64,000 bases of DNA from positions 62,001-126,000 of IMG/VR virus record IMGVR_UViG_3300008259_005066. One strand, 5' to 3'. The notes beneath the pieces were generated by a model. It did no database searches. It had not been told where the DNA came from and was given only the letters and a program-made list of their open reading frames with translations. Positions 10,747-55,973 of this stretch are shown here, piece after piece (position 1 is the stretch's first letter; every line of letters starts with the position of its first letter). A program made the translations under genes and the position numbers.

Positions 10747-10759
10747 ATTGCAGTGCAAT
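10747..10759. promoter_or_regulatory. Palindromic operator, PhaR-box-like, between divergent aceA and the KKPAAK gene
   Basis: ATTGCAGTGCAAT perfect palindrome, same core as 6731-6743. Confidence 0.6.
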
Positions 10760-10817
10760 ATGCTAGGTTTCGATAATATGCTGTGTAAATACACTATATA
10801 AAACAAAGGAGACTGCA

Positions 10818-13197: not shown

Positions 13198-13746
13198 TCA
13201 ATTAAGTAATTGTAACACGGCTTCAAATTTATCGCAAGTGAGATTGGGGATTTTGGTCAGGCTTGCATCCAAATCATTGGCATGATCAATCAAGACAAAT
13301 TGGGTTTGAGGATAGGTATTTAGGGTGGCCCGAAAAGCATTAAGGTAATTGGTTTTCTTATGCTTTTGGAACTTGTCTGTTTCGGTAATCTTGCTGACAT
13401 CGTAACCAAAAAGCAAAACCAAATCTGCGGAGTCAGCCACGAGATGCATGGACACGATCTCTTCAGGGTGGTCGAACTCTCCTGGAAAATCTCCATCATA
13501 TAGATTTACCTTGGAAGGTCTGTTCAACGCACCATAGTTCTTGTTGGGTATGTAGAGATTGCACACAGCATGGAACGCTCTTTTTATCAATTCGTCGGCC
13601 TTGGAAAAATCGTGGCACAGAACATTGTCTGTCTGCCAGGCACGCCATGTGCGCCAAGATCCCCAGAGAGCCCCTATGTCTTTGAGTTGCCCAGGCTCGA
13701 TATGAGTTGCCGAGAACTCGTCGGCCAGCACACACACTATCCTCAC
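13198..13746 (-). CDS. Hypothetical protein
   Basis: GTG start overlapping the upstream TGA; Rossmann-like LLFGYD segment. Confidence 0.6.
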   Translation of the reverse strand: MRIVCVLADEFSATHIEPGQLKDIGALWGSWRTWRAWQTDNVLCHDFSKADELIKRAFHAVCNLYIPNKNYGALNRPSKVNLYDGDFPGEFDHPEEIVSMHLVADSADLVLLFGYDVSKITETDKFQKHKKTNYLNAFRATLNTYPQTQFVLIDHANDLDASLTKIPNLTCDKFEAVLQLLN

Positions 13747-15035
13747 TGTGACATCCTCACAGTTTGCCAACGGAATGCACCAAGACATACCCATGCAAAG
13801 ATACCATCACTGGCATTGGTATTAAACACTATGTCACCCTTGGTGCCACTGTAACCGGGCACTTCAGTGCTCCATGACAAGCGATTACGTGCTATCCGCA
13901 GTTGTTGCACAGTGACCATGCCATCACTGTCTACTTCTATGTGATTCTGGCGATTGACACCGATCACCAAATTTTGTTTTCGATTGCTGCCAATGAAACT
14001 GGTGTTCTTGCTGTATTTGCCCAGAGCGAGATTGGTTTCTTCGTCCCATACGCTGAGTGCGCTGTCAGGTTCTTGTGTGTTGACGCCAACGCGATTTTTT
14101 TGCACAGTTAAAGTCTTGGCTAGATTTGTGGTCCCCGATACTTCGAGATTTTCCACTGTGCCTAGTTTCTTGATATTGCTATTGACCACTCCGGCACTGA
14201 GAGTGTTGCCCGTGACCAATGGGTGCCCATCCACTGTGATGTTTTCGATTTCAATGCCGGATTTGGTAGAATCAATCACTGTGGCGATCAATTCGCTGGC
14301 GAAATCCTGTTTGATGCGGTCATAGGTAACATTGCCCACATGGCGGCTGAGATCCTGCCAGGTTTGGTTGTCAGTGTTGATGCGACCTTGTATGCCCAGG
14401 TCACCTTGGACCAAGACATCTCCGTTGATCTTCACGTTATGTTCCACTGTGAGATCGTGTGTGACAGTTTCGTGCTCGATGACCACCACTCCGTCCATGA
14501 CTGTGAGTTGGGTGGAGCCGGATTGATCAACTATGCCCGCAGTGCGGAAATCTCTCTTGATAGCAGTGATCAACTGGTCTTTGTTTTCCATTATGGCCTG
14601 AGAAATCTTGGCATTTAGATCTATATCTCTCAAGAGATTGCGTAGGCGATCTTCTGTGCGCTGTGCTATCAGCGTTTCAATTTTGGTAACCCATTGCGGA
14701 TCCACAGACAGATTGTTGATGGTATTTTCAACAAAACGTTCTACGGCTAGATCCACTGTCTGGCGGATCTTGTCCTGATCAACATAGGAATTCAAATCAG
14801 GAACAAATCCGCTGGCAAACATTTCGCCTACTTTGTGTTCCACAGTGGTCACGAGATCAGGCAAGGTTCCGATATTGCTGAATCTAGCCGTGATACGATC
14901 CTGCACGAACCCAATGATCTGCTGTTCGAGATCCTGGAGCCATTCGGGTTGACTCACTGCCTGTTGCACCTGCAGTCGTGCTTCGTTGCGTATTTCTTGT
15001 TCGACTATGTGTGCCAGTTGTTGTGCGTCAAGCAT
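13743..15035 (-). CDS. Putative structural/fibre-like protein
   Basis: Helical N-terminus, beta-repeat C-terminus (RVGVNT..P, KGDIVFN..WVC). Confidence 0.55.
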   Translation of the reverse strand: MLDAQQLAHIVEQEIRNEARLQVQQAVSQPEWLQDLEQQIIGFVQDRITARFSNIGTLPDLVTTVEHKVGEMFASGFVPDLNSYVDQDKIRQTVDLAVERFVENTINNLSVDPQWVTKIETLIAQRTEDRLRNLLRDIDLNAKISQAIMENKDQLITAIKRDFRTAGIVDQSGSTQLTVMDGVVVIEHETVTHDLTVEHNVKINGDVLVQGDLGIQGRINTDNQTWQDLSRHVGNVTYDRIKQDFASELIATVIDSTKSGIEIENITVDGHPLVTGNTLSAGVVNSNIKKLGTVENLEVSGTTNLAKTLTVQKNRVGVNTQEPDSALSVWDEETNLALGKYSKNTSFIGSNRKQNLVIGVNRQNHIEVDSDGMVTVQQLRIARNRLSWSTEVPGYSGTKGDIVFNTNASDGIFAWVCLGAFRWQTVRMSQ

Positions 15036-15948
15036 GCTCTCTCCATAGGTCCAGCGTCACGCAATGGAAACCACCGCCCAAGGTGCGACTGTGACTCAAT
15101 CGGTGTCCTATCACTGTGATACCGTGTTTTTCTAACTCTCTTTGTAGCACCCGTTGATCACTGTCCATGATCACTGTGTTAGGATCTACCACGAGCATAT
15201 TTAAGGCTATCCATTTAGAAGCATAGGGGTATTGATAAAATCCCTGTTCTTTGACATAGTCAACGTAGAGCACTTCCCAATCTTTCAAGGCCCTAGGCAG
15301 ATTTTCTGGTGTGACTCGTGCGGCATTGACAATGACCAATCCTTCTCTGATCGGGACTATGGTAGAATCTATATGCACGCCAGAATAAAAATTGCAAAGT
15401 TCTATCGTGATATGTGGAAATTGTTCGCACAGCCATTCATAGGCTTTACGATTGCCCGATGCACTTTCTAGATATAGCCAAGTATCGCCAAGTCTGCACA
15501 CATTGGCTGCGTCCAATATCATGCCTTCGTTGCGCGGCATGTGCAGATATCTTTCACAAGAATCAACTACATCATGATAGGCCGCCAATTCCATGTCTCT
15601 GCAAGGATACATCATGGCAGGATCCACTATGGTTTCGCCGGCTACCAATAATCTATCTCTGGGGCAATAGTTATACATCCCTCCCAAGGCAACAAAATCT
15701 ATTTCTTGTGGACGGTATACTTCTACACCTAGCCCAGTGAGTTTGTGTGCGAGATCATCCAGTTCAGATTCTGCTTCATCCACTATCCATTGTGGCACAG
15801 GACCTGATGGAACTGGTGTTTCTTTCCACAAGGTCTTTTCACTTTCCAGGGCAAACACAGGATCTTGGCTAGGCCAATTGGCATGCTTGGCAGATCCTAT
15901 CACTATGGATCGCAAAGGATCCCATTCATTGTAGCTAGATATTTTCAC
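15028..15948 (-). CDS. Amidinotransferase (glycine/inosamine-phosphate amidinotransferase family)
   Basis: NEWDPL, CPRD, DAAN, HIDST, GGGFHCVT (catalytic Cys). Confidence 0.9.
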   Translation of the reverse strand: MKISSYNEWDPLRSIVIGSAKHANWPSQDPVFALESEKTLWKETPVPSGPVPQWIVDEAESELDDLAHKLTGLGVEVYRPQEIDFVALGGMYNYCPRDRLLVAGETIVDPAMMYPCRDMELAAYHDVVDSCERYLHMPRNEGMILDAANVCRLGDTWLYLESASGNRKAYEWLCEQFPHITIELCNFYSGVHIDSTIVPIREGLVIVNAARVTPENLPRALKDWEVLYVDYVKEQGFYQYPYASKWIALNMLVVDPNTVIMDSDQRVLQRELEKHGITVIGHRLSHSRTLGGGFHCVTLDLWREHA

Positions 15949-16478
15949 AGATGTCCTGTTATTTGTAGAGTGTAACGATCTTCAAGACCGATGTTGGCTG
16001 CCATGTGCGGCACATCATAAATCCATTCTGCCACTGTGCCTGCATGCCATTTGACCACAGGATCGCCCTGCACTTCTAGATAGTGTCCCGACTGCCAATC
16101 TTCCAACATCACCAATGCCCGGCGTATGTTGTATTCTTGACCTTCCAGTCCAAACAATTTTACATACTTTACATAACGATCTTGATGCACTGGCATCACT
16201 GTTCCGGAAGTCATTCTATAGTAAGATGTTCCAATATCTTTCCACCCCATGGCAGAAAAATAGTCTACGAAAAGATGATTCCAACTGGGTTGACGTCCTT
16301 TCATGTCTGCCATGGATCCACATATTTTGGGTTGATATCCTTGGGCCATCCATCGTCTCACATCTTCTGAATCGTTGAACGGCTCTTGGATGTAATCTAG
16401 ATGCTTGAATTCATCATCCCAAAAAACATCCAAACTGTAAATTTTATAATCCAGTCCGGCCATCTCGTGTGTTGCCAT
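15945..16478 (-). CDS. 2OG-Fe(II) oxygenase-like protein
   Basis: HQD (HxD), distal H in PHMAAN, R in DRYTLQITG. Confidence 0.75.
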   Translation of the reverse strand: MATHEMAGLDYKIYSLDVFWDDEFKHLDYIQEPFNDSEDVRRWMAQGYQPKICGSMADMKGRQPSWNHLFVDYFSAMGWKDIGTSYYRMTSGTVMPVHQDRYVKYVKLFGLEGQEYNIRRALVMLEDWQSGHYLEVQGDPVVKWHAGTVAEWIYDVPHMAANIGLEDRYTLQITGHL

Positions 16479-17688
16479 AATGGATCACATTATATTGTGG
16501 TGTAGAAGGCATTTTCCGCCAAGGATCAACAATGACAGAACCATAGGCTATGGGAGAATAGAACGTGTCATCTCTCACATCACCAGTGTATCCATAGGTG
16601 ATTTGTCGATTGTGTGCCAGCAACAATACACAAGGACCAGTGATCGATTGGACTACATCGTCGCTGTCATCTGCCAAGGGATCTAAGTATTTCACAGAAT
16701 AACCGGCCTCCTTGATATAGAATCCTATCAACGTGGAGTAGCTACCGATACAGTAGGCAACATCAGGCTTGTATGCCTTGCCATGTATGACTATAGGCAA
16801 ATTCTTTTCTTTGGCTTGGTCTACTAAAAAGTGTGCTAGATTTTTTGCTTGTATTTCTCGAGCATGCATGATGGTGTCAAACAAGTCATAGCCAATGTCA
16901 TACTCTTCGGCCAACCAACGCAAGGCGATGTTGTCTCGAGGATGGCAAGCACCTGCATCGCCCATGCCCGCGGTCATGTATTTGGGTCCCATGATACGCA
17001 TGGTTGATTGGGCAAGGGCATCGGTCACAACATCCACATTGATGTTGCCAATCTTCAGCGCAAAATCCTGTATCATGTTCACCAGTCCAACCTTGGCAGA
17101 AATGAATGTGTTGTAGAAAATCTTGATGGCTTCGCACTCGTCCCAGGTACCTGTGACATAACGGGGATTGTTTTTCATCAACGGGCGATATAGATCGATT
17201 AGATCACGCATCTCAGATGCATCACCAGTTTCTGTCCCGATCATGACCATTTCGGGATTGGCCATATCCCATTTGACCGAGCCCATGGCTATGAGGTAAG
17301 GATTATAAAGGAACTGATGCTGTGGACCCAACAAGTTGGCAAAATGTCTGCGTGTGGTTCCCGGCAACACTGTAGAGATCAATACCACACGCTTGGGTGT
17401 GTCAGCATGTTCATTGATCTGACTAATAGCGTCTTTCACCGCATCATGCCCAAAGTCTCGAGGCTCCATGTGCGAGCTGGGCACTGATCCATCATAGCCC
17501 TCGGCGTGTGGAGTTGGCACAGCGATAAAGATCCAGTCGCTTTTTTTGACCACTTCGTCAATGCCACAAACTTCAACGGTATCACTATACCTCGGATATA
17601 TATCATACCCTCGGACTGTGTAACGTTCAGCAAATACCTCTGCACAGTCTAGACCCAGTTTTCCTAGACCAATAAAACCTATATTCAT
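16444..17688 (-). CDS. UDP-glucose/GDP-mannose 6-dehydrogenase family
   Basis: GFIGLGKLG, AVPTP, STVLPGT, K..YN, GACHPRD; SD GGAGG before MNIGF. Confidence 0.92.
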   Translation of the reverse strand: MNIGFIGLGKLGLDCAEVFAERYTVRGYDIYPRYSDTVEVCGIDEVVKKSDWIFIAVPTPHAEGYDGSVPSSHMEPRDFGHDAVKDAISQINEHADTPKRVVLISTVLPGTTRRHFANLLGPQHQFLYNPYLIAMGSVKWDMANPEMVMIGTETGDASEMRDLIDLYRPLMKNNPRYVTGTWDECEAIKIFYNTFISAKVGLVNMIQDFALKIGNINVDVVTDALAQSTMRIMGPKYMTAGMGDAGACHPRDNIALRWLAEEYDIGYDLFDTIMHAREIQAKNLAHFLVDQAKEKNLPIVIHGKAYKPDVAYCIGSYSTLIGFYIKEAGYSVKYLDPLADDSDDVVQSITGPCVLLLAHNRQITYGYTGDVRDDTFYSPIAYGSVIVDPWRKMPSTPQYNVIHYGNTRDGRTGL

Positions 17689-17703
17689 TGTTTCCTCCAT
17701 TAA

Positions 17704-19005
17704 ATGACAGTGCCTGCTCATAATTTATACGATTTTATACATCAGGTCACAGAAAAACGTTTCTGGTTGTTGTATTTTTACCAATGGGGTAATAAAGATC
17801 TCAAGAACGTTTTGGACTACCAAAAGGACTATGAACACACAAAAGGACCCAATGGCATAGATAATCTGCTGGGAGAAACCTTCTTAGATCCAGATCAGAT
17901 AGGACTAAGCAGATTTTCATTGGCTAGGAATTTCCAACCGGTATTGTTTTGTCATGATCAAGAACCACTGAATTATGAACTGTATCAAGATGGACAGCCG
18001 TTGTTACACAAAACCGAAGAGTTCAATCGACAGGATTATAACTTTCCTGTGCAGGATCAAAATCTCAGAAACACCATAGTATGGTCTTGGCAAAAACAAT
18101 GGATCCTATTGCATTCTGAAATCAATTCCCCTCAACTGCAAAAATATGAATCCACTGGTCGTTATTGCGGCGCTTACTGGTGGAGCCATGCGTTGATTGC
18201 CCGTGATTGGTATAGATTTGCCCAACATGATCAAAGTCTCGAGAGAAAAAAGATCAAAAAAATATTTTTGATATATTGCAGAGATCAGACTGGTACCAGA
18301 CAATATCGCCAACAGGTCATGGATCATCTAAAACACAATGGACAATGTGATTTTGCAAATCCTACAACAGCAGATGCCATGGCCAGCGCCTATTATAACA
18401 GTGAAGATTTTTGCAAGACTGGTATAAGCCTGATCTTGGAAACTCTGTTTGAAGATCCAAGGATACACTTGACTGAGAAAACACTCAGGCCCATAGCCTG
18501 CGGACATCCATTTATCTTGGCTGCCGGACCCGGCGCCCTGGCAGTGTTAAAATACTATGGATTTGAGACTTTTAGCCCTTGGATTGATGAGTCATACGAT
18601 CATGAGTCCGATCATTCCACCCGCCTTGATCTCATACTCAAAGAGGTTGACAGGTTGTCTTCAATGGCTCCCGAACAACTCAATGAAATACTTGCTCATT
18701 GCTGGGCCGTGGCCCAGAGAAATAAACAACGGTTCTTTTCGGATAATTTCCTGAAATTCATAAAAGATGAACTTTACCATAACGTCATGCAAGCATATGG
18801 AAGGACCCAGAACAAATTGGATCCTTCATACTGGTGGTATGTGCGTCAATGGCGAAAGCAACACTTGCCTCAGAGTCCGCGATCTAACAAATACACCTTG
18901 CACCTGGTCAGACATCTACGACTCAACCAAGGGTCACTTGAACAATATCAGCGCCATGATCACAGCCTGGATGATGAATCCGGCACCAATTGTGACAATG
19001 TTTAA
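17704..19005 (+). CDS. Glycosyltransferase-like protein (GT10-like TEK motif)
   Basis: LILET...LTEKTLRPI..GHPF...GFETF..IDESYD. Confidence 0.6.
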   Translation: MTVPAHNLYDFIHQVTEKRFWLLYFYQWGNKDLKNVLDYQKDYEHTKGPNGIDNLLGETFLDPDQIGLSRFSLARNFQPVLFCHDQEPLNYELYQDGQPLLHKTEEFNRQDYNFPVQDQNLRNTIVWSWQKQWILLHSEINSPQLQKYESTGRYCGAYWWSHALIARDWYRFAQHDQSLERKKIKKIFLIYCRDQTGTRQYRQQVMDHLKHNGQCDFANPTTADAMASAYYNSEDFCKTGISLILETLFEDPRIHLTEKTLRPIACGHPFILAAGPGALAVLKYYGFETFSPWIDESYDHESDHSTRLDLILKEVDRLSSMAPEQLNEILAHCWAVAQRNKQRFFSDNFLKFIKDELYHNVMQAYGRTQNKLDPSYWWYVRQWRKQHLPQSPRSNKYTLHLVRHLRLNQGSLEQYQRHDHSLDDESGTNCDNV

Positions 19006-47520: not shown

Positions 47521-49398
47521 TCAGGCTAGATCAGGATTGTTGCGGGCAAAGTTGGCTTGGCTGAAACGCATGCGATCCACGTATTTCATGCCCTGGCCCA
47601 CATAACCTTCGTGTCCGGGCTCGTCGTTGATGGATGCCTGCACATCATGTGCTTGGCTGTCTAACTGTCGCACCACTTGATTCTTCAAGGCGCTGAGATC
47701 CAAGAATGTCTGGAACACAGCGGCCACGCCCTGTTTGTTGAGATTGGCCCACTCAAATATGCGCGGTGCCTTGGCTGGTTCTCGTTCCTGCACCCAGGGA
47801 CCAAATCCCTGTATCAAGTTATCATAACTGCCAGCACGCACACGGGTGTTGATATACTGTTTCATCAACTGTGGTAAGTTGGTGATCTTGCGGGCACGCA
47901 GTTCTGCAGGGTTGAACAGCGCATCTATGGCCGCACCTTTGGATTTCAGTAGATCCTGTGTTTTCTTTACGGTCTTGGCGTCGAGTTTTATTTGCTGTGG
48001 TTCTCGCAGGCTGGGGTCCAAGATCAACAGGCCCGGAACCGGCTTCAGTGCCGCCGCACGTATGGGAGTGGCTGCCGCACCTGGCGCATCTAACTGTGTG
48101 TGGACGACCACTGCGGCATCACTGGCCGCGATCTGGCGACCAAGATCGCTGTCAGCATCCACTGAATATTTCACTGTGTTGGGCTGGAACACCCATTTGC
48201 CATTCTCTTGTTGAGGTTGTGCGCTGTAGAGCAAGTCTCCTTGAACATAGCCTCTGAAATCTGGAGGTGTGGCTGCTCTCAACAACGGAAACAGTTTTTG
48301 ATATAGTCCTATGAGTTCGCCACGCTCGCCGCCTCTGGCAGTCATGATGCGGGCGATCATATCAGGCGAAGTGGCCAGACCATCATAGCCCTTGGCCAGG
48401 AAACCGGCCTTGTCAGTGAGCACAAAATCACCGTTGGATTTGCGACCAAAGATGATAGCGGGTTTGCCATCCCATTTCACAGTGGCAGTGTCTGGTTGCT
48501 GTGCGGTATTTACAATGCCTGTGAGTGCTTGTTGTGCGCCGCGACTGCCCATGTCAAATACCATGTCTTCGGGATGCTCGATGCGCACACCTTCAGCGAT
48601 GATTTGCATGCCCTGATTCACGATCCTGTCGCGCAGGCGAGCCAAGAAATGCACTTCGGCTTCTTCTAAATTTTCATCAAAGGGCTGGCCTTCACGTTCC
48701 ATGTGCGCACGGAAGTCTGCTATCTTGCTGTCTTTGTTTGGATCCATTTTGAGAGCACGCATGATGCTCTCCACGGAATAGAGGTCTTTGGCCGATGCGG
48801 TGGGATTCAGCAACAGTTTGGCCACCGCGTCTGGATCGTCGGTGACAATGTCATTGGTGTTGCGATTTGCGATACCATCATTCTGATTGAGTTTGAAACC
48901 CATGGATTTGGCCATGGAGTTGATCATGATGTTGCGCAGGGCACCTTTGTAGGCACTGGCCGGATCGCTACGCAACACGAACTGATTCCAGCGTGGTTTA
49001 TTTGCGAACATGAAATCGGTCTGCACAAACCCACGACGTGGGTCACCACCAATGGCAGTGAGGAAATGCACAGATATTCCGGACTTCTTGATGTAGCGTT
49101 GTGGATCCACTCCTTGCTGTTTGGCCCAATCTCGCAGTCGATCTATCAATTGTTCTTTGGAGATTTTTGTGGCATCTATCTGCAGATCCAGATCACCTGA
49201 TGATTCCTTGCGACCGGTGGAACCCAACCAGCGTGCCGGTTGTCCATCTATGGAGTCTTTTTCTGTGGTAAAGTCAATGCCAGTGATGGGTTCTAGCCAC
49301 TGCACAGTGGGCATGATGTCGGCTTGCGCTATGCGTTGCGTGATGACCTGTCCTTGATCATCCTTGAATACGTTGCCACCTTCTAGTAATCTCATCAT
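47521..49398 (-). CDS. Fusion of a Pol-beta-type nucleotidyltransferase domain and a ligase-like KxDG domain
   Basis: LGSTG...SGDLD...QTD; TVKWDG.P...QGDLL; ATGA-coupled start 49398. Confidence 0.7.
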   Translation of the reverse strand: MMRLLEGGNVFKDDQGQVITQRIAQADIMPTVQWLEPITGIDFTTEKDSIDGQPARWLGSTGRKESSGDLDLQIDATKISKEQLIDRLRDWAKQQGVDPQRYIKKSGISVHFLTAIGGDPRRGFVQTDFMFANKPRWNQFVLRSDPASAYKGALRNIMINSMAKSMGFKLNQNDGIANRNTNDIVTDDPDAVAKLLLNPTASAKDLYSVESIMRALKMDPNKDSKIADFRAHMEREGQPFDENLEEAEVHFLARLRDRIVNQGMQIIAEGVRIEHPEDMVFDMGSRGAQQALTGIVNTAQQPDTATVKWDGKPAIIFGRKSNGDFVLTDKAGFLAKGYDGLATSPDMIARIMTARGGERGELIGLYQKLFPLLRAATPPDFRGYVQGDLLYSAQPQQENGKWVFQPNTVKYSVDADSDLGRQIAASDAAVVVHTQLDAPGAAATPIRAAALKPVPGLLILDPSLREPQQIKLDAKTVKKTQDLLKSKGAAIDALFNPAELRARKITNLPQLMKQYINTRVRAGSYDNLIQGFGPWVQEREPAKAPRIFEWANLNKQGVAAVFQTFLDLSALKNQVVRQLDSQAHDVQASINDEPGHEGYVGQGMKYVDRMRFSQANFARNNPDLA

Positions 49399-49978
49399 AT
49401 GGCCTGCGAAACTGTGGTGGACTTGATTTTGCCTGCGGCATCCTGTGAAAGACTGTTGTGCAATGGTGTGCCGGCGATGACCTGTTGGCCGCTGGCACTG
49501 GTCCAACGACCATTGGCCCAGGTGTAGATTTCGTCAGGAATCTCGGTAGTTCCTGCCCTGCCGCCACGCACCATCACATTGTATCCGTTAGGTATTTCCG
49601 GAGCCACTGCGGTTTTGCTGACTTTGTAGGCGGGCAAAAAATGCTTGGCCAGATATTCACGCATCTGTTCTATGGCTGGTTGGGTGATATACTTGTCCAT
49701 GTTGCGCTCATCCACAGCGACCTGTCCTTGCATGGCTTGCTCTAACCAGGCAGCCGCTCGTTTTTTGTATTCATCCGCATCCATGACCTGTCCAGCAGTC
49801 TTGCCAGCGTTTATTTTCTTGGCCTGACGCCGGGTATTTTGCCCATGGCGCCTTTGATCGCGGCTCCGGCCTTGCCCATCATGGCCGAACGGCTTTGGGC
49901 CATGCGATCTTGCTCGGCACGCCCAATGGTGGCCAAATCTTGGAAAATACCTTCGTTAGTGACCTGTTTAACTTTCAT
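49395..49978 (-). pseudogene. Hypothetical gene broken by a frameshift/deletion near 49827
   Basis: MKVKQVTNEG...KIPGV switches frame to QAKKINAGK...MDADEY. Confidence 0.6.
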
Positions 49979-50213
49979 CGGTGCGTCTCACGGTCCTCGT
50001 GAATTTTGACGCATCCCGCATGCGTATGGCGTTGAGTAGCTTGCGCTGGAGATTTTCTGCCTGCTCTGGATCATAAGTGGCATCGATCTGCTCCATGAGC
50101 CTGATGGCGCCGGCAATGATGTTTGAAGCACGATTTTCTATCACGTGCCTGCGATCACGCTCGATATACATAGCATCGAGTTCTTCTAATATACTGCGGG
50201 TCTTTTTGTGCAT
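49968..50213 (-). CDS. Hypothetical protein
   Basis: 81-aa ORF, TAAATA upstream. Confidence 0.75.
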   Translation of the reverse strand: MHKKTRSILEELDAMYIERDRRHVIENRASNIIAGAIRLMEQIDATYDPEQAENLQRKLLNAIRMRDASKFTRTVRRTDES

Positions 50214-50267
50214 GATCCGAACCTTTAAATTATTTAGTAGATTTTACGTATCTGTAAATATCCTTAT

Positions 50268-51320
50268 ATGATAAGTCAACGTAAAGTTTCAAGTCACAGC
50301 CAATGGCAACCATTGAAAGAAGTATGGGTAGGTGGCACTTATCCTGCAGATTTTTACCAGCATCTTGGCAACAAATCCCACGATATTTTTGCAAAAATCA
50401 CTGAAATTACCAACAAAGATTTTGACAATCTAACAGACACATTGGAAAAATTAGGTGTCACAGTAGTCAGGCCTCAATTCGATCGTATAGACGACTTTTT
50501 AGACGAACATGATCATTTGCTTAAACCACCGGTAAGTCCATGCGACATAGCACTGACACTAGGAGATACTTTGCATCTCATGCCTCAATACACGTCCGAA
50601 GTAAATCCCTATCAACGTGCTGTAGATGATTATCGCCAAGCAGGACAAAAAATACATGTCATTGACCGTGCTACACCAGAACCATGGGCCTGGATGATTT
50701 TTGCCAGCGTGGTGCGGGCCGGAAAAGATATACTGATAGATTATCAGCCAAATATACCAGAATCAAAAAAATACACGTATCTGGTAGCACAGGAATTAGC
50801 CAAAGATTATAGAGTGCATCTCAGTGGCACTGGAGATCATAACGACGGAGTTTTTTGTCCGATTAGGCCAGGGCATATTTTTACGTCTCATTATAGAAAG
50901 GTCTATGACTCAAGTTTTCCAGGATGGTCTGTGTTCCATCTGCCAGACACCACATATAAAAATCTCCAACACGTTGGTATAGCCGACAAGTGGTATCTAC
51001 CCGGAGTAGACTACGGGCATTTCAACGCAGATATAATGGCCGTGGCAGAACAATGGTTAGGCAATCCGCAAGAAACTGTTTTTGAAGTCAATATGTTGGT
51101 AGTAGACGAAAAAAATATCATATGTGGCGCTTACGATGAAATGGCTTTTCAATATTTTGAATCTCTAGGTATCACTCCGCATTTGGTAGAATTTCAATCT
51201 AGATATTTTTGGGATGCCGGAATACACTGCGTTTGTAGTGATATACATCGATCAGGGGGCCGGGAGGATTATTGGCCTGAGCGCGGGGACAGCGGCATCT
51301 ATTATATAACGGAGTGGTAA
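50268..51320 (+). CDS. Second amidinotransferase-family protein (divergent)
   Basis: SQWQPLKEVWVG, SPCD, HNDG, EVNML, DAGIHCV. Confidence 0.82.
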   Translation: MISQRKVSSHSQWQPLKEVWVGGTYPADFYQHLGNKSHDIFAKITEITNKDFDNLTDTLEKLGVTVVRPQFDRIDDFLDEHDHLLKPPVSPCDIALTLGDTLHLMPQYTSEVNPYQRAVDDYRQAGQKIHVIDRATPEPWAWMIFASVVRAGKDILIDYQPNIPESKKYTYLVAQELAKDYRVHLSGTGDHNDGVFCPIRPGHIFTSHYRKVYDSSFPGWSVFHLPDTTYKNLQHVGIADKWYLPGVDYGHFNADIMAVAEQWLGNPQETVFEVNMLVVDEKNIICGAYDEMAFQYFESLGITPHLVEFQSRYFWDAGIHCVCSDIHRSGGREDYWPERGDSGIYYITEW

Positions 51321-51791
51321 ATGAAAGAACGAATACGTTTTGAATTCGACATAAGATCAGAATTTTGGGATAAATTTCCCATGATAGAAATTTCCGTTGA
51401 TGATCGTATCAAATGCACAAAAACTCTAGATCAAAAGCAATGCAAATTATCCTTTGAGGATGATCTAGAATTTGATCGCCCACACACAGTATCTTTAAAG
51501 AGATTTAACAAAACAGATGATCAATGCGTGATTGATAACAATGGATCTCGGTTCGATCAATATGTTATCTTGAATCAAGTTTGTATTGATGGTATCGATG
51601 TGCAGAATCTCATCTGGCACCGCAGTTGGTTTGAACCTATCTATTCCACAGTATGGAAACAACAACAGATAGATGCTGGAGTTGCGTTGGAAGAAAAAAT
51701 CATCGGAGAAACTTGGTTAAGTCACAATGGGACATGGAAGTTTGAATTTTTCAGTCCTTTTTATAAATTTATTATCTCACAATTTGAGTAA
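51321..51791 (+). CDS. Hypothetical protein
   Basis: 156-aa ORF in operon. Confidence 0.7.
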   Translation: MKERIRFEFDIRSEFWDKFPMIEISVDDRIKCTKTLDQKQCKLSFEDDLEFDRPHTVSLKRFNKTDDQCVIDNNGSRFDQYVILNQVCIDGIDVQNLIWHRSWFEPIYSTVWKQQQIDAGVALEEKIIGETWLSHNGTWKFEFFSPFYKFIISQFE

Positions 51792-51797
51792 ATCATC

Positions 51798-52628
51798 ATG
51801 ACATGGCAATTAACTAAAACAACAAAAACTCTCTTTCCTGTGAAAGATCAAAAAATGATATCATTGCGACAGTCATGGTATCACGATGCTCAAAGACAAA
51901 GCACCTATCAAGACTTTTTCCCGATGGCAAAAGAATGGTTCACATCAACCAAGATCAACGATATACAAGGGTGGGACGCTTTCCCTCATGTGGACGTGAC
52001 CATGGGATGCACACATTATATAGAAAGTTTTGTCCAAAAGCATGGATGGAATGGATTTCAGATACTCAAGAACGAATATGCTTATTATACCCTAATGGGC
52101 AAACATGGAGTAGAAGTCAATGACCTTGAGCCCAACAAGCCATTGATCATCACCATGCCCCATTGGACTTTTTGCGATGTCAGACCGGAGTGGGAGGATG
52201 TTCTAAGAATCTGCGAACAGAGGATGATTGATATCCACATCGATATGGCATGGATTGTCACTGCCAAAGATATCCATCTAGATCTCAATCATCCCTGCAT
52301 CAAAAGCATTGGTGTGAGTCTCAGCAAATTGAGCCTACAATGGAATCGAGTAGGACTACGATTCAGCAGGCAAAAATCCATGGATTCTGTGACAATATTC
52401 AACGACTACTACAAAGATACCAACACAGTGATCACTTCTATCGGTTGCTATTGGATTGATAATTTTGAAAGAGATTATCTATGGAATTCCTATGGCGGTC
52501 AACATCAAGAAATTTGTAGGACTTTAGATATCTTGCCAACAAAAATAATACATGTGGCCAAAGATAAAACAGGACAATCGTTAGGTATCGGTAAGATGCT
52601 TGGAGATGCGACTCCACACAGCGTATAA
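51798..52628 (+). CDS. PLP-dependent fold-type-I-like enzyme (truncated aminotransferase-like)
   Basis: IDMAW, SLSK, RVG motifs. Confidence 0.6.
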   Translation: MTWQLTKTTKTLFPVKDQKMISLRQSWYHDAQRQSTYQDFFPMAKEWFTSTKINDIQGWDAFPHVDVTMGCTHYIESFVQKHGWNGFQILKNEYAYYTLMGKHGVEVNDLEPNKPLIITMPHWTFCDVRPEWEDVLRICEQRMIDIHIDMAWIVTAKDIHLDLNHPCIKSIGVSLSKLSLQWNRVGLRFSRQKSMDSVTIFNDYYKDTNTVITSIGCYWIDNFERDYLWNSYGGQHQEICRTLDILPTKIIHVAKDKTGQSLGIGKMLGDATPHSV

Positions 52629-53189
52629 GATGTAGCGGGTAGTTCCGGCTGAAACTACACTCTCTGACCTATGAGAGATTTTGTCTGTTCTATCATGTTG
52701 GATTAGATACCCTGAGTTGTGCTCACTGGGTATCAGGATCGGAGTGTGTTCCGATCCAAAGATTGTTCCCACCCCAGATGAAGTGTAGAGATATATTTGC
52801 ATGGCAACATCGATGTCAGGATTATCAGTGTGCCAACCAATTTCATATCCCGCTTCATCTTTCCAGAGCGATACTCCCCAGAAATGTTTATAGGGGTCTG
52901 TAAACGTTTCATTGATCAGATCTGTCGCAGAATCAAATATTTCATGCAACTCTTCTATCACTGTATCAAAATCCCAAGTGATTTTTTGTCTAGGAAGAGT
53001 TTCTTGACCTTCCACTGTTTGCCATTTGTCATTGGAAACCGATGAAACATACTGATTGAGTTTTTGTAATATCGCAAGATCTAAGACATCTGTTATCTGA
53101 TACAAATCTGCTATAGGGGTAGACAGTCTGTTGGAGATGCAAGACGCTAGATGTTTCTTGTTGTTCTCGATCAAATCCTGATCTATCAT
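52581..53189 (-). CDS. 2OG-Fe(II) oxygenase-like protein
   Basis: WHTDN, QIYL, NSGY, distal H, R. Confidence 0.72.
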   Translation of the reverse strand: MIDQDLIENNKKHLASCISNRLSTPIADLYQITDVLDLAILQKLNQYVSSVSNDKWQTVEGQETLPRQKITWDFDTVIEELHEIFDSATDLINETFTDPYKHFWGVSLWKDEAGYEIGWHTDNPDIDVAMQIYLYTSSGVGTIFGSEHTPILIPSEHNSGYLIQHDRTDKISHRSESVVSAGTTRYILYAVWSRISKHLTDT

Positions 53190-54583
53190 GACTGTTTGAT
53201 TTGTCCTAATAACTGTTTGAGTTTGTTTGATTGCACATCGGCTGTGACCTTGCCAACATCTTCAGCTGGTTCACTGTTGTCATCCTTCATAGTAGACTTG
53301 GCCTTGATTGATTCGTAGATGTTGGGTTTCTTGACAAATCCAGAACTTTGCTGTTGGTCTTCGCCTAAATCTCTGATACGCAGGCTTTCAATGTCAAACT
53401 CTAAATCTACCTTCTGTCCCACTCCACTCGATGAACGAGTCTTCATCAACTGTATCTGATAGCGACCACGTTCACGCATGGCTCGACTTGTGAAGATACC
53501 AAACACATTATCTGCTGTGTTGATCTTGGAAATACCACCCGATATATGGCTATGATCGAACTCAATCTCTTCCACTGCCGCACGATTCAACTGCGAAGCA
53601 GTGACAAACAATACATTGAGTTCTTTAGCCAAGTTGCGCAGTTCTTCTGAAACATACTTGTCTTTGACGAATAAATCATTGGGGCTAACTTTGGCACTCA
53701 CCGGCATGATCAAGTCTAGATAATCTACGCATAAAAAATCCACACGTTTCTTTGTCTTCACTTGCAGTTCTTTGAGATATGCACGGATATCATTCACTGT
53801 GCTCTGTGCTGGCATGTATTTGATCTGCAAGGCGCCGGCCTTCTTCTGCATCATCTTGACTTTCATTTCCACTGTATCGATATCTCGAAAAATTTCTTTG
53901 CTAGACGTATTGGTCATCATGGAGTCGATGCGCATGGAACAAAGACCTTCTGACAGTTCCAGCGTGATGTAACAACCGTTGAGCCCGGCCTGTGCCCAGT
54001 TCACTGCCAAGTTCTGCATGAACAAACTCTTGCCAGAACCTGAACCTCCTGCGAAAATCTGCAATTCACCTCGGTTGAATCCACCATACAGCAATTTGTC
54101 CAGGGCAGGCCATCCAGTAGAGTTCTGTCCATTATTATTTTTCAAGGCCAGCAGTCTCGATCGCGGATCTTCAAAGTAATCTGTGCCCAGATCCTTGGTC
54201 AATGATATTTGCACGGCATCCTTAATCAACTTCTCCACAGGATCAAAATTGCCCTTTTCCAAAAGGTCCGCCGACTTAAGGATCGCACGTTCCAATTCTT
54301 GTCGACGAGTGAATGATTCAAACTCTTCCATGAACCAGTCGAGATGCCCTTCATTGATATCGGGTATTTCTTGTAGGTCAACATTGGTCACTGCTCGAAC
54401 CTGTTTGCGATCAGGCAAAGTTTTGTGTTGATCACAGTGTTCTCGGATAAACTTCGCGGCACTACGCAGGCTGCGATCAAAGTTTTCTTCATTGAATATG
54501 TTCTGCACTCGCACGTAACTCTGTGCGTCCTGCATCATAAACTCCAGGAACAACTTTTGGACTTCTACGGAATAATCTTTCAT
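53186..54583 (-). CDS. Replicative helicase (DnaB/T4 gp41-like)
   Basis: GGSGSGKS, LELSE, VDYLD, TASQLNR, KTR. Confidence 0.95.
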   Translation of the reverse strand: MKDYSVEVQKLFLEFMMQDAQSYVRVQNIFNEENFDRSLRSAAKFIREHCDQHKTLPDRKQVRAVTNVDLQEIPDINEGHLDWFMEEFESFTRRQELERAILKSADLLEKGNFDPVEKLIKDAVQISLTKDLGTDYFEDPRSRLLALKNNNGQNSTGWPALDKLLYGGFNRGELQIFAGGSGSGKSLFMQNLAVNWAQAGLNGCYITLELSEGLCSMRIDSMMTNTSSKEIFRDIDTVEMKVKMMQKKAGALQIKYMPAQSTVNDIRAYLKELQVKTKKRVDFLCVDYLDLIMPVSAKVSPNDLFVKDKYVSEELRNLAKELNVLFVTASQLNRAAVEEIEFDHSHISGGISKINTADNVFGIFTSRAMRERGRYQIQLMKTRSSSGVGQKVDLEFDIESLRIRDLGEDQQQSSGFVKKPNIYESIKAKSTMKDDNSEPAEDVGKVTADVQSNKLKQLLGQIKQS

Positions 54584-55269: not shown

Positions 55270-55973
55270 AGCCATCCTAACTCCTGCATGCGAGGACACA
55301 ATACTTTTTCATACCAATGATGATTGCCCGCAGATCCATAGTGACCGTGCCATCCGTGAGTATCAAAGTCCACGGGACGATGGACATTTTTGTTAGTGCT
55401 GAAGTAGGTATCTTCAAACAGGATACTGTGCGGATCTGCTAAAAATCTTCTCTGTATACTGGCCAGTGTTGGCCACTCGGTCTTGGGCTGGAATGGTTCG
55501 GCGAGATTCACGATGAGATAATTGCTAGTCCATCCTTGGATATATCTAGTCAATAAAAATAATTCTCTAAGAGCCTGTGCTTCTTGCCAACTACGATTCC
55601 ATGACATTACATAGCCTTGGCCCAGCTGATGAGTAGTGACTTGCCTGAGCCCATCATGTTCTCGTAAGCATGGTTGATCTATGGGTTCTAGATTGCCAAA
55701 AAATCTATGATAACTAGGAGCCATACCATCATAATCATACACAGTAAATCTCTCGATAGGGGGCACACCCACTATTACATAATCGTTAGGACTAAATCCA
55801 GAACCAGCCACTATGAGATGTGATATGCTATCTACGTTGTTTCCTGGCCAACTGTAGTTTTCTACACTATCAACTTGCAAGGCAGCAGCCATTAAGCCCC
55901 ACCAAGAATCCTTGACATCTACACAGAATCCTGGTGTGCTATAACTGTCGCCATACACGATCAATCTAGACAT
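55266..55973 (-). CDS. SGNH-like hydrolase
   Basis: YGDSYS, NYSWPGNN, HGHY. Confidence 0.7.
   Translation of the reverse strand: MSRLIVYGDSYSTPGFCVDVKDSWWGLMAAALQVDSVENYSWPGNNVDSISHLIVAGSGFSPNDYVIVGVPPIERFTVYDYDGMAPSYHRFFGNLEPIDQPCLREHDGLRQVTTHQLGQGYVMSWNRSWQEAQALRELFLLTRYIQGWTSNYLIVNLAEPFQPKTEWPTLASIQRRFLADPHSILFEDTYFSTNKNVHRPVDFDTHGWHGHYGSAGNHHWYEKVLCPRMQELGWL

What the first reader, a model, noticed from the sequence alone, without database searches (positions are those of the whole stretch)
50268..53189. Amidinotransferase cassette 2 with PLP enzyme and 2OG oxygenase
Seen: an AT-richer plus-strand operon with its own TAAATA (50255-50260) encodes a divergent amidinotransferase, an unknown protein and an SLSK/RVG PLP-type protein; a 2OG oxygenase converges on it. 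Inference: oxidation, transamination and amidination mirror the logic of streptidine synthesis. Two independent amidinotransferase-oxygenase pairs in 64 kb suggest a recurring functional module.
Basis: partly seen in the sequence, partly recalled or inferred. Interest (0 to 1): 0.62.

Follow-up and report, generated by a model that had tools for sequence, protein, structure and literature searches.

The report
Jumbo-phage amidinotransferase–PLP–oxygenase gene module
Four adjacent genes of an uncultured freshwater jumbo phage, none recognised by family databases, encode a divergent amidinotransferase, a virus-only small protein, a stripped-down PLP (aminotransferase-class) enzyme and a 2-oxoglutarate oxygenase; the set recurs beside the replicative helicase gene in many related phages, which points to an uncharacterised phage pathway that probably builds an amino- or guanidino-modified small molecule.

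Summary
All four ORFs lie at the stated coordinates and are the AT-richest genes of the genome.

- ORF1 (50268-51320) belongs to the AGAT/StrB1 amidinotransferase family by sequence. It keeps Cys, His and both guanidino-binding Asp, but has lost the triad Asp.
- ORF3 (51798-52628) folds with high confidence as a compact class I/II aminotransferase-type PLP enzyme. The Lys, Asp and Arg motifs are invariant.
- The convergent ORF (52581-53189) is a P4H-type 2OG-Fe(II) oxygenase with HxD...H...R.
- ORF2 belongs to a virus-only family.

The setting is not a bacterial gene cluster. It is a roughly 315 kb freshwater jumbo phage, and the cassette sits between the dnaB helicase gene and a DUF6267 gene.

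In 28 dereplicated phage lineages that carry the PLP gene, ORF2 accompanies it in 23, the oxygenase in 20, an amidinotransferase in 15, and all three in 11. This holds through several rearrangements and also away from dnaB. A radical-SAM gene takes the oxygenase's place in some lineages.

Amidinotransferases of this family also occur very widely without the other genes.

The "oxidise, transaminate, amidinate" reading is chemically coherent and is my best guess, but substrate and product are unknown. Verdict: partly supported. This is a new variant of a known kind, of moderate-to-good interest.

The parts
50214..50267 (+). Divergent intergenic region holding the TAAATA hexamer (50255-50260). 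Possible promoter of the plus-strand operon, unproven.
   Evidence: Sequence read. The promoter scan is not above shuffles. A relative in run X14 lacks 2 nt at 50265.
50268..51320 (+). AT2: divergent amidinotransferase (pentein fold), 350 aa. Cys321, His191, Asp93 and Asp193 are kept. The triad Asp is replaced by Ile144.
   Evidence: No Pfam hit. Matches phrog_25854, function unknown.
51321..51791 (+). 'unk': 156-aa protein of a virus-only family that nearly always lies directly upstream of the PLP gene. Possibly a beta-sandwich partner or subunit.
   Evidence: Adjacent to the PLP gene in 23 of 28 lineages. Complex prediction gives weak support only.
51798..52628 (+). Compact (276 aa) fold-type-I PLP enzyme of the class I/II aminotransferase family. 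Invariant G70/T72, D149-x-x-W152, S174-x-x-K177 and R184.
52581..53189 (-). P4H-type 2OG-Fe(II) oxygenase, 202 aa. H120-x-D122, H173 and R185 are present; the RxS Ser is Ile187 in this copy. Translationally coupled to dnaB, and its 3' end overlaps the PLP gene by 48 nt.
   Evidence: A 171-nt contig from a metatranscriptome library covers 52773-52943.
52660..52677 (.). Short palindromic hairpin followed by a T-run on both strands, 32 nt after the PLP stop. Terminator-like.
   Evidence: The number of such sites is not above shuffles.
53186..54583 (-). DnaB-like replicative helicase: the conserved anchor on one side of the module.
49968..50213 (-). 81-aa conserved gene. Together with DUF6267 (47521-49506) it is the conserved anchor on the other side.
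15028..15948 (-). AT1: second pentein/amidinotransferase paralogue (306 aa) of 'cassette 1'.
15945..16478 (-). 177-aa protein with an HQD...H motif, overlapping the AT1 start. Probably a small cupin/2OG oxygenase.
   Evidence: The same gene order is seen in S-SCSM2R ORF308-309 and in L155, L164 and L192.
16444..17721 (-). UDP-glucose/GDP-mannose dehydrogenase family gene, upstream of the cassette-1 pair.

Best explanation
The four genes are an accessory small-molecule tailoring module of a clade of uncultured jumbo phages. It sits in the replication-gene region, between dnaB and DUF6267.

Shown:
- The core is the gene pair 'unk' plus a compact class I/II-type PLP enzyme.
- The core is usually joined by a P4H-type 2OG-Fe(II) oxygenase. 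In some lineages a radical-SAM enzyme sits there instead.
- In about half of the lineages an AGAT/StrB1-family amidinotransferase is also present.

Inferred mechanism:
1. The oxygenase (or radical-SAM enzyme) oxidises a C-H or C-OH of a hydroxylated scaffold to a carbonyl. The scaffold is most likely a sugar, nucleoside or nucleotide, or an amino-acid-derived compound.
2. The PLP enzyme transaminates the carbonyl to an amine. 'unk' may act as its partner.
3. Where an amidinotransferase is present, its Cys-His active site transfers an amidino group from arginine to that amine, giving a guanidino product.

Lineages without the amidinotransferase would stop at the amine. Substrate, product and benefit to the phage are not known.
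For: Enzyme identities: amidinotransferase; PLP enzyme; Lys, Asp and Arg motifs aligned to AvtA; 2OG oxygenase with the full HxD...H...R set.

Operon packing and oxygenase-dnaB coupling.

Linkage in 28 dereplicated lineages with at least 3.5 kb of flank:
- unk in 23, oxygenase in 20, amidinotransferase in 15, all three in 11.
- Oxygenase or adjacent radical-SAM in 22.
- At least one partner in 25.

Linkage survives different orders and orientations: AT2>unk>PLP|<OG; DnaB>unk>PLP>AT3>OG; OG>DnaB>unk>PLP>AT3; AT2>OG>PLP. It also survives where no dnaB lies within 10 kb (L087, L089-L092).

Distant 22-29% PLP homologues again lie next to an amidinotransferase and radical-SAM genes (L108, L110, L111).

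In L011, L031 and L062/63 a radical-SAM gene occupies the position beside the PLP gene and the oxygenase is absent.

An unrelated T4-like cyanophage carries a fold-I PLP enzyme, a radical-SAM, a 2OG oxygenase and an amidinotransferase in one cluster (PMC12801897). Campylobacter phages carry an amidinotransferase among five radical-SAM genes (PMC2853527).

The structural ties of the oxygenase include PolD and PasI, which act on amino-sugar nucleoside phosphates. From my own knowledge, in the polyoxin pathway a 2OG oxygenase makes a ketone that a PLP aminotransferase aminates.

Complex prediction for PLP + unk: ipSAE 0.46, best control 0.00, partner pLDDT at least 88, contact agreement at least 95%. 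The mark was reached by 58 of 80 solved complexes and 2 of 110 mismatched pairs. At 0.60 or under it was reached by only 7 of those 80 solved complexes and by both mismatches that passed. This is weak support.
Against: - No substrate evidence of any kind.
- The PLP fold family also contains lyases, decarboxylases, cyclases and oxidases, so transamination is only the default reading. 12 of 36 family members give faint Pyridoxal_deC matches.
- The window's amidinotransferase lacks the triad Asp (I144). The whole AT2 clade and this genome's AT3 copy lack it too.
- The window's oxygenase has Ile in place of the RxS Ser.
- The amidinotransferase is absent from 13 of 28 PLP lineages. The amidinotransferase family occurs in at least 582 viral contigs, mostly without the PLP gene or the oxygenase.
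- Close AT2 relatives sit alone next to dnaB (L014, L126, L128-L141). Part of the adjacency may therefore reflect a shared accessory slot rather than selection for linkage.
- The oxygenase's nearest structural neighbour is a protein prolyl hydroxylase (PPHD, Z 16.5), statistically tied with the small-molecule enzymes.
Confidence: 0.45

Rival explanations
1. Arginine-centred amino-acid tailoring. The oxygenase hydroxylates arginine or another guanidino amino acid. The class I/II-type PLP enzyme then cyclises, oxidises or transaminates it, as in capreomycidine, enduracididine or streptolidine chemistry. The amidinotransferase makes or recycles the guanidino substrate.
For: All three enzyme classes handle arginine-type substrates in known pathways (my own knowledge: VioC/VioD, OrfP/OrfR, MppP/MppQ, GntC). 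MppQ, MppP, RohP, Plu4 and GntC are among the structural matches of the PLP model, at Z 14.7-16.6. The amidinotransferase keeps both guanidino-binding Asp residues.
Against: Those PLP matches are tied with dozens of ordinary aminotransferases and C-S lyases. The oxygenase is P4H-type, not the clavaminate-synthase/TauD type of the known arginine hydroxylases. No invariant Arg that could hold an alpha-carboxylate is seen near the C-terminus of the PLP family. This reading does not explain why the amidinotransferase is often absent.
Confidence: 0.2
2. No common pathway. The dnaB-proximal slot is an accessory-gene hot spot, and the amidinotransferase, the unk-PLP pair and the oxygenase are independent phage accessory genes that merely accumulate there. 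The oxygenase could, for example, be a protein prolyl hydroxylase.
For: AT2 relatives occur alone beside dnaB. PLP lineages exist without an amidinotransferase (13 of 28) or without the oxygenase (8 of 28). The amidinotransferase family has other, commoner contexts. In the window the oxygenase is coupled to dnaB, not to the plus-strand operon. The best structural match of the oxygenase is the EF-Tu prolyl hydroxylase PPHD. The low GC and opposite strand fit a moron-like insertion.
Against: Linkage persists through at least four different gene orders and in loci with no dnaB within 10 kb. It also persists for 22-29% identical PLP homologues. The same enzyme classes cluster in unrelated cyanophage and Campylobacter phage genomes. 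unk-PLP-AT3-OG are co-directional and tightly packed in the commonest arrangement.
Confidence: 0.2
3. A DNA or nucleotide hypermodification pathway. The module decorates a base or nucleotide with an amino or guanidino side chain to protect phage DNA from host nucleases.
For: The module is embedded among replication genes: primase, dnaB, RNR and ligase. PLP and radical-SAM enzymes take part in known thymidine hypermodification (my own knowledge: Lee et al. 2018). AlkB/ABH2 and the nucleoside-phosphate oxygenases PolD and PasI are among the structural matches of the oxygenase.
Against: There is no ThyA- or ThyX-family gene (a candidate pyrimidine hydroxymethylase) in the 209 kb record. The near-identical, 91%-complete 316 kb genome also has no ThyA-family gene; it was not searched for ThyX. 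No kinase, glycosylase or transglycosylase was recognised next to the module. The module is facultative among close relatives (L014/L126 lack unk, PLP and OG).
Confidence: 0.1

Closest known systems
L-arginine:glycine amidinotransferase family (AGAT, StrB1, HsvA, SxtG)
   Same: A family profile hits exactly these four solved enzymes and no other pentein family (E 8.6e-25 to 4.5e-17). The catalytic Cys and His and both guanidino-binding Asp residues are invariant.
   Different: Below Pfam and NCBIfam thresholds. The triad Asp is lost in the window's copy and its clade. Virus-encoded and expanded to three paralogues in one phage. Acceptor substrate unknown.
Class I/II aminotransferase family (PF00155: AvtA, kynurenine aminotransferase, PatB/MalY C-S lyases, HisC)
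   Same: Same fold over 255-260 of 276 residues, Z 14.6-17.4. The PxNPTG-like, D-x-A-[YW] and S-L-S-K...R-x-G motifs align with AvtA.
   Different: About 100 residues shorter than any solved member. No Pfam hit, and a profile-profile comparison with bacterial members fails. No conserved C-terminal carboxylate-binding Arg is evident. The family was found only in viruses. It is always paired with a 130-180 aa protein of unknown fold.
Prolyl-4-hydroxylase-type 2OG-Fe(II) oxygenases (PPHD, PHD2, OGFOD1) and the related nucleoside-antibiotic enzymes PolD and PasI
   Same: Double-stranded beta-helix fold, Z 15.6-16.5 over 176-194 of 202 residues. HxD...H...R motifs are invariant.
   Different: 10-16% identity and no Pfam hit. 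Substrate class (protein or small molecule) unresolved. Ser of RxS is Ile in this copy.
Streptidine branch of streptomycin biosynthesis (dehydrogenase, StsC aminotransferase, kinase, StrB1)
   Same: Same formal logic of oxidation, transamination and amidination, and a StrB1-family enzyme for the last step.
   Different: The oxidant here is a 2OG oxygenase or radical-SAM enzyme, not an NAD dehydrogenase. The PLP enzyme is class I/II-like, not DegT/StsC-like. No kinase, phosphatase or inositol-phosphate synthase is nearby. The host is a phage.
Clusters annotated in phage isolates: Synechococcus phage S-SCSM2R ORF305-309 and ORF266-269; Campylobacter phages CP220/CPt10 gp080-087
   Same: An amidinotransferase next to 2OG oxygenase, radical-SAM and fold-I PLP genes in large phages. 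Noted in print as unexplained (PMC12801897, PMC2853527).
   Different: Those clusters lie among glycosyltransferases and resemble the window's cassette 1 (AT1 34.7% identical to ORF309). They lack the unk-PLP pair, which gave no hit in 50,697 phage records.

Membership tests
Amidinotransferase family (AGAT/StrB1 branch of the pentein superfamily) | Significant sequence similarity to characterised amidinotransferases and not to other pentein families | tested here: met
   phmmer: AGAT 4.8e-9, HsvA 6.7e-4, SxtG 7e-4. Profile A4: AGAT 8.6e-25, HsvA 2e-19, SxtG 2.8e-19, StrB1 4.5e-17. No ADI, DDAH or agmatine deiminase at E<=1.
Amidinotransferase family (AGAT/StrB1 branch of the pentein superfamily) | Nucleophilic Cys (AGAT C407) and general-base His (H303) | tested here: met
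   C321 and H191 align with AGAT C407 and H303 and are invariant in 37 and in 23 family members.
Amidinotransferase family (AGAT/StrB1 branch of the pentein superfamily) | Third triad residue Asp (AGAT D254) | tested here: not met
   Ile144 in the window's protein. The position is variable (I/T/V/C/E/G) in the AT2 clade and Asn in this genome's AT3. It is Asp in 27 of 37 sequences, the AT3 type.
Amidinotransferase family (AGAT/StrB1 branch of the pentein superfamily) | Guanidino-binding Asp pair (AGAT D170, D305) | tested here: met
   D93 and D193 are invariant.
Amidinotransferase family (AGAT/StrB1 branch of the pentein superfamily) | Curated family-model threshold (Pfam PF02274, NCBIfam) | tested here: not met
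   No hit for ORF1 at E<=0.01 (Pfam) or E<=0.1 (NCBIfam). AT1 and an AT3 homologue reach only 0.0018-0.0038.
Amidinotransferase family (AGAT/StrB1 branch of the pentein superfamily) | Amidino transfer from arginine to an amine acceptor, as opposed to hydrolysis | not testable with these tools
   Needs an enzyme assay.
Fold-type-I PLP enzymes, class I/II aminotransferase family | Fold-type-I architecture | tested here: met
   AF2 pLDDT 92, pTM 0.89. At least 500 Foldseek matches at E<=1e-3; the 50 listed are all PLP fold-I enzymes. In the unbiased VIA search the top 50 are all class I/II family, Z 14.6-17.4.
Fold-type-I PLP enzymes, class I/II aminotransferase family | Schiff-base Lys after strand f, pyridine-N Asp at the end of strand e, phosphate-binding Arg | tested here: met
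   K177, D149 and R184 are invariant in 36 sequences. They sit at the ends of strands 168-174, 146-149 and 186-190. Profile A6 aligns them with the IDNAY and SLSK..R.G motifs of AvtA, at a marginal E of 0.005.
Fold-type-I PLP enzymes, class I/II aminotransferase family | Full-size two-domain subunit with a C-terminal alpha-carboxylate-binding Arg | tested here: inconclusive
   276 aa against 334-517 aa for the matched chains. No invariant Arg after residue 226. Residue-level superposition was not available.
Fold-type-I PLP enzymes, class I/II aminotransferase family | Curated family-model threshold (PF00155) | tested here: not met
   No Pfam hit for ORF3 or for any of 36 members. hhalign against 10 bacterial PF00155 proteins gives probability 0.4%. 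One structurally near ESM Atlas cluster has PF00155 in 14% of its members.
2OG-Fe(II) oxygenase superfamily (P4H type) | Double-stranded beta-helix fold | tested here: met
   pLDDT 92.3. PPHD Z 16.5, PasI 16.0, PHD 15.6, PolD 15.6, OGFOD1 15.6. Foldseek E about 7e-8.
2OG-Fe(II) oxygenase superfamily (P4H type) | HxD...H iron triad and the Arg that binds the 2OG C5 carboxylate | tested here: met
   H120, D122, H173 and R185 are invariant in 22 sequences. The Ser of RxS is nearly invariant but is Ile187 in the window's copy.
2OG-Fe(II) oxygenase superfamily (P4H type) | Curated family-model threshold (Pfam) | tested here: not met
   No relevant Pfam hit for the protein or for any of its 22 relatives.
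Streptidine-type (aminocyclitol) pathway | NAD-dependent dehydrogenase, DegT/StsC-class aminotransferase, kinase and cyclitol synthase alongside the amidinotransferase | tested here: not met
   Pfam scans of the neighbouring genes found none of these. The PLP enzyme groups with class I/II, and no DegT-class chain is in the top 50.

The most novel reading that the evidence does not exclude
A widespread clade of uncultured jumbo phages encodes a previously unknown pathway: a minimal virus-only PLP enzyme with an obligate small partner, a 2OG or radical-SAM oxidant, and an amidinotransferase. Together they would make a guanidino- or amino-modified nucleoside, nucleotide or sugar. The product would be either a new phage DNA hypermodification or a phage-made bioactive metabolite used against the host or its defences.
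Probability: 0.15. Interest if true: 0.85.

Novelty: new variant of a known kind. Interest (0 to 1): 0.58.

Why it matters
Phage-encoded amidinotransferases next to radical-SAM or 2OG enzymes have been noted since 2010 (Campylobacter phages) and again in 2025 (a cyanophage, where they were called "antibiotic synthesis genes"). No function has been assigned.

This locus adds a defined, testable four-gene unit. Two of its members, the 276-aa PLP enzyme and its small partner, are invisible to Pfam, PHROGs and NCBIfam and were found only in viruses. It also shows that the unit is conserved across dozens of freshwater and marine jumbo-phage lineages.

If the genes act together, this would be a rare case of a multi-step small-molecule pathway carried by a virus. 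It would also give a compact PLP scaffold of interest for enzymology. If they do not act together, the locus still provides fold assignments for three large viral dark-matter families.

Tried and rejected
- Pfam, PHROGs and NCBIfam scans of the four proteins: no usable hit.
- Per-member Pfam scans of the three family alignments: only faint, non-specific matches. Pyridoxal_deC appeared in 12 of 36 PLP members (best 0.0022), SBP_bac_3 in 13 of 36, and CBM60 in 2 of 37 unk members.
- phmmer and profile searches of PDB with ORF3, the oxygenase, unk and profiles A1-A3: nothing relevant. Only the broadened profile A6 reached AvtA. The single distant homologue from L111 gave nothing.
- hhalign of A1 against ten bacterial PF00155 proteins: failed.
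- megablast of the region and tblastn of the PLP protein against 50,697 phage records: no match.
- Pattern scan of 185,579 prokaryote species genomes for the PLP family: none. The amidinotransferase "hits" in MAGs are phage-like contigs sharing many genes with this phage.
The ESM Atlas holds a confident model, but its neighbours are all unnamed viral clusters.
- ThyA and ThyX searches, to test a hydroxymethyl-pyrimidine route: negative in this record. ThyA was also negative in the 91%-complete near-identical genome, which was not searched for ThyX.
- Promoter and terminator scan: not above shuffles.
- Read laying: only contigs were available. One 171-nt contig from an RNA library lies inside the oxygenase gene, which does not prove transcription.
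- The cyanophage 2OG proteins next to its amidinotransferases show no sequence similarity to this genome's ORFs.
- No alternative genetic code was needed.

Full report
**What is there**

The window is bases 62001-126000 of a 209.5 kb IMG/VR virus record, which CheckV estimates at about 60% complete. A near-identical 315,778-bp contig is 91% complete. The same phage is present in lake and other freshwater metagenomes from 17 studies.

The surrounding genes are phage replication and nucleotide-metabolism genes:
- DnaB-like helicase, 53186-54583.
- Toprim primase, 55966-56955.
- DUF6267 protein, 47521-49506.
- Ribonucleotide reductase, ATP-dependent ligase and a PD-(D/E)XK nuclease.

The helicase is 55% identical to that of the PA5oct-like Pseudomonas jumbo phages and 48% identical to that of Agrobacterium phage Atu_ph07. 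The finding is therefore a cassette inside a jumbo phage, not a bacterial biosynthetic cluster.

**The observation**

The three plus-strand genes are packed like an operon. The stop of the first is followed at once by the ATG of the second, and 6 nt separate the second and third. They run against the prevailing minus-strand direction of the genome, which has 215 minus-strand and 52 plus-strand ORFs.

The fourth gene is on the minus strand. Its last 48 nt overlap the end of the third gene, and its ATG overlaps the dnaB stop codon (ATGA). It is therefore coupled to dnaB, not to the plus-strand operon.

The four genes have GC of 0.420, 0.346, 0.404 and 0.412. The 209 genes of 100 aa or more average 0.479 +/- 0.035, so these four fall in the lowest 0-7% (profile).

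TAAATA is present at 50255-50260. Promoter-like matches in the region are not enriched over shuffles, so that part is unverified.

**Identities**

No Pfam, PHROG-with-function or NCBIfam model recognises any of the four proteins.

*ORF1 (AT2).* It matches human AGAT at 4.8e-9, and also HsvA, SxtG and StrB1. A profile of 23 phage relatives matches just these four solved amidinotransferases, at 8.6e-25 to 4.5e-17, and no other pentein family. Residue conservation is as follows:
- Invariant and aligned with AGAT: Cys321 (C407), His191 (H303), Asp93 (D170) and Asp193 (D305).
- The third triad residue (AGAT D254) is Asp in the AT3 subgroup. It is Ile144 in the window's protein and variable in its subgroup.

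*ORF3 (PLP).* It has more than 180 relatives, all unnamed and all 255-300 aa. With a 36-sequence alignment, AlphaFold2 gives pLDDT 92 and pTM 0.89. The structure searches agree:
- Foldseek returns at least 500 matches at E<=1e-3, and the 50 listed are all fold-type-I PLP enzymes.
- An unbiased VIA-align search of 48,161 chains puts only class I/II aminotransferase-family members in the top 50, at Z 17.4-14.6 with about 255 of 276 residues aligned.
- The ESM Atlas neighbours are viral clusters, one of which has PF00155 in 14% of its members.

Invariant residues fit the PLP site: G70/T72, D149-x-x-W152, S174, K177 and R184. They lie at the ends of the expected strands.

I added three 315-325 aa distant homologues to the profile. 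Its best PDB match then became valine-pyruvate aminotransferase AvtA. The E-value is marginal (0.005), but the alignment lies exactly on the PxNPTG, IDNAY and SLSK...R.G motifs.

The protein is about 100 residues shorter than any solved relative, and I see no conserved C-terminal Arg for an alpha-carboxylate.

*The convergent ORF (OG).* It folds at pLDDT 92.3 as a double-stranded beta-helix. The nearest structures are:

| Structure | Z |
|---|---|
| Pseudomonas prolyl hydroxylase PPHD | 16.5 |
| PasI | 16.0 |
| A PHD | 15.6 |
| PolD | 15.6 |
| OGFOD1 | 15.6 |

These values are; Foldseek results are. H120-x-D122, H173 and R185 are invariant. The Ser of RxS is Ile in this copy.

*ORF2 (unk).* It belongs to a virus-only family; its nearest ESM Atlas cluster has 697 members. 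It has a confident Atlas model but no named neighbour. The only hints of a beta-sandwich are faint CBM-like matches.

**Surroundings in relatives**

I fetched 80 viral loci through the PLP family and more through ORF1 and contig look-ups.

The commonest arrangement is co-directional: primase, (radical-SAM), DnaB, unk, PLP, AT3-type amidinotransferase, OG, an 81-aa gene, DUF6267. In the window's lineage the segment is inverted, and an AT2-type paralogue sits upstream of unk.

I dereplicated the loci at 90% PLP identity and required at least 3.5 kb of flank. That leaves 28 lineages:

| Partner near the PLP gene | Lineages (of 28) |
|---|---|
| unk | 23 |
| OG | 20 |
| Amidinotransferase | 15 |
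| unk, OG and amidinotransferase together | 11 |
| OG or an adjacent radical-SAM gene | 22 |
| At least one of amidinotransferase, OG or radical-SAM | 25 |

Without dereplication, 44, 29 and 38 of 50 loci carry unk, an amidinotransferase and OG, and 21 carry all four genes.

Linkage survives several different orders and orientations. It also survives in loci with no dnaB within 10 kb (L087, L089-L092). PLP homologues of 22-29% identity on phage-like MAG contigs again lie beside an amidinotransferase and radical-SAM genes.

In L011, L031 and L062/63 a radical-SAM protein sits directly beside the PLP gene and OG is absent. This is consistent with an oxygen-independent substitute for the oxidant, which is inference.

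A complex prediction for PLP + unk scored ipSAE 0.46 against a best control of 0.00. Partner pLDDT was at least 88 and the runs agreed in at least 95% of contacts. The mark was reached by 58 of 80 solved complexes and 2 of 110 mismatched pairs. At 0.60 or under it was reached by only 7 of those 80 and by both mismatches that passed. This is weak support only.

**Limits of the linkage**

The amidinotransferase family is very common in viral contigs.

I sampled the 80 loci most similar to ORF1. Of the 52 with at least 3 kb of flank, 2 had the PLP gene, 3 had unk, 1 had OG, 11 had a radical-SAM gene and 7 had dnaB. This sample is biased towards AT2-like sequences.

Close AT2 relatives sit alone beside dnaB (L014, L126, L128-L141). 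The commonest context of other family members is a trio of small genes: 167 aa, 146 aa and DUF6614.

Two conclusions follow. The amidinotransferase is a versatile, facultative partner. Part of the adjacency could also reflect a shared accessory slot beside dnaB.

**The "two pairs" claim**

The genome has three pentein paralogues:
- AT1, window 15028-15948.
- AT2, the ORF of this finding.
- AT3, at contig 164037-165209, outside the window.

AT1's start overlaps a 177-aa protein with an HQD...H motif. That protein's nearest ESM Atlas cluster carries Asp_Arg_Hydrox in 21% of its members, which is a lead rather than proof. A UDP-glucose dehydrogenase gene lies upstream.

The same order (dehydrogenase, small oxygenase-like gene, AT1) recurs in L155, L164 and L192. 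The oxygenase-like/AT1 pair, without a detected dehydrogenase, recurs in L017.

AT1 is 34.7% identical to the "inosamine amidinotransferase" ORF309 of Synechococcus phage S-SCSM2R. A 2OG oxygenase gene overlaps ORF309 there, in a cluster with glycosyltransferases, a fold-I PLP enzyme and a radical-SAM gene. That phage's second amidinotransferase is likewise followed by 2OG oxygenases. Its authors call these genes unexplained "antibiotic synthesis genes" (PMC12801897).

Campylobacter phages CP220 and CPt10 carry an amidinotransferase among five radical-SAM genes. This was noted in 2010 without a function (PMC2853527).

The recurring pairing is therefore real.

**How it most likely works**

Shown: the four gene products are a Cys-His amidinotransferase-family enzyme, a PLP enzyme with an intact cofactor site, an Fe/2OG oxygenase with an intact metal and co-substrate site, and a virus-only small protein tied to the PLP enzyme.

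Inferred: one linear route uses all three chemistries.
1. Oxidation of a C-H or carbinol to a carbonyl.
2. PLP-dependent amination of the carbonyl.
3. Amidino transfer from arginine to the new amine.

This route explains three observations. An oxidant (OG or radical-SAM) nearly always accompanies the PLP enzyme. The amidinotransferase can be absent, in which case the amine is the end product. And the same enzyme classes cluster in unrelated large phages.

It has precedents. From my own knowledge, the streptidine pathway follows this logic, and so does the 2OG-oxidase-then-aminotransferase step of polyoxin and nikkomycin nucleoside biosynthesis. The polyoxin enzyme PolD, and PasI, which was crystallised with an octosyl-acid nucleoside phosphate, are among the oxygenase's closest structures.

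I put this reading at about 0.45. The specific order of steps is less certain than the claim that the genes work together.

Rivals:
- Arginine-centred amino-acid tailoring, 0.2.
- No common pathway, only an accessory hot spot, 0.2.
- DNA or nucleotide hypermodification, 0.1. This is weakened because no ThyA/ThyX-type gene is present in this record, and no ThyA-type gene in the 91%-complete genome.

**Novelty and verdict**

Each enzyme belongs to a known superfamily. Amidinotransferase genes in phages have been annotated before. New here:
- Fold and active-site assignment of two large viral dark-matter families (the 276-aa PLP enzyme and the oxygenase).
- The virus-only unk-PLP pair.
- The conserved four-gene unit in the replication region of many jumbo-phage lineages.

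I rate it a new variant of a known kind, interest about 0.58.

Read laying was given 5,101 letters. Only table 11 was used. The costly representative-protein search was not run.

Noticed in passing
window 15028-15948, window 50268-51320 and contig C1:164037-165209 (outside the window); loci L126-L203: The phage carries three pentein/amidinotransferase paralogues. The family is present in at least 582 IMG/VR contigs. This is a large, functionally unassigned expansion in big phages.
   Followed up: partly
contig C1:197637-198909 (outside the window); L101, L103, L104, L106, L107, L147 and others: The commonest neighbours of phage amidinotransferases are a trio of small genes (167 aa, 146 aa and DUF6614), seen in 32 of the 80 sampled loci. 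In this genome the trio is contiguous with no amidinotransferase, and a GIY-YIG SegE-type homing endonuclease lies about 400 bp downstream at C1:199343-199789.
   Followed up: partly
window 13198-17721; L017, L155, L164, L192; S-SCSM2R ORF308-309: Cassette 1 (UDP-sugar dehydrogenase, a small HQD...H cupin-like protein, AT1) is conserved in other jumbo phages. The cupin-AT pair is also present in a T4-like cyanophage among glycosyltransferases, which suggests a sugar-directed pathway distinct from cassette 2.
   Followed up: partly
L011:5785-6924, L031:10869-12008, L062:10821-11897: A radical-SAM gene sits directly beside the PLP gene in lineages that lack the 2OG oxygenase. This may be an anaerobic/aerobic alternation of the oxidant.
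   Followed up: partly
window 172-1494; contig C1:202504-203994 and 205009-206157: There are at least seven radical-SAM paralogues in this phage. Several have the SPASM domain N-terminal to the radical-SAM core, an unusual, apparently permuted order.
   Followed up: no
window 7175-12188: A row of auxiliary metabolic genes: a fatty-acid-desaturase-like gene (7175-8026), a class II aldolase (8501-9130), an isocitrate lyase (9433-10911, E 3.5e-107) and a haem-dependent oxidative N-demethylase alpha-subunit-like protein (11394-12188).
   Followed up: no
window 1487-2077, 3693-4274, 27558-28757: Two ClpP-like protease genes and a ClpX-like ATPase with a zinc finger are encoded by the phage. The ClpP assignment of 1487-2077 rests on a 72%-identical homologue in L017.
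   Followed up: no
window 52581-52628: The 3' ends of the PLP and oxygenase genes overlap convergently by 48 nt. A similar overlap is kept in relatives (about 42 nt in L021, about 12 nt in L024). A palindromic hairpin at 52660-52677 lies inside the oxygenase coding region.
   Followed up: partly
L061:1263-2238 and L065:357-1472: The 'unk' gene is tandemly duplicated upstream of the PLP gene in two lineages.
   Followed up: no
window 52773-52943: A 171-nt contig from a freshwater metatranscriptome library (run X20) matches the oxygenase gene exactly. This is presence in an RNA library only, not proof of transcription.
   Followed up: partly
L100-L113 (genome contigs): Contigs binned into MAGs of very different phyla (Saccharibacteria, Bacteroidota, Legionellales, Pseudobdellovibrionaceae, Pacearchaeota) share several genes with this phage. 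They are probably phage contigs mis-binned into those MAGs, so they give no reliable host clue.
   Followed up: partly
contig C1:143583-144715 (outside the window): There are two further paralogues of the module's oxygenase. One is detected at 4.8e-9 with the family profile and the other is marginal, at 0.015. They are arranged convergently.
   Followed up: no
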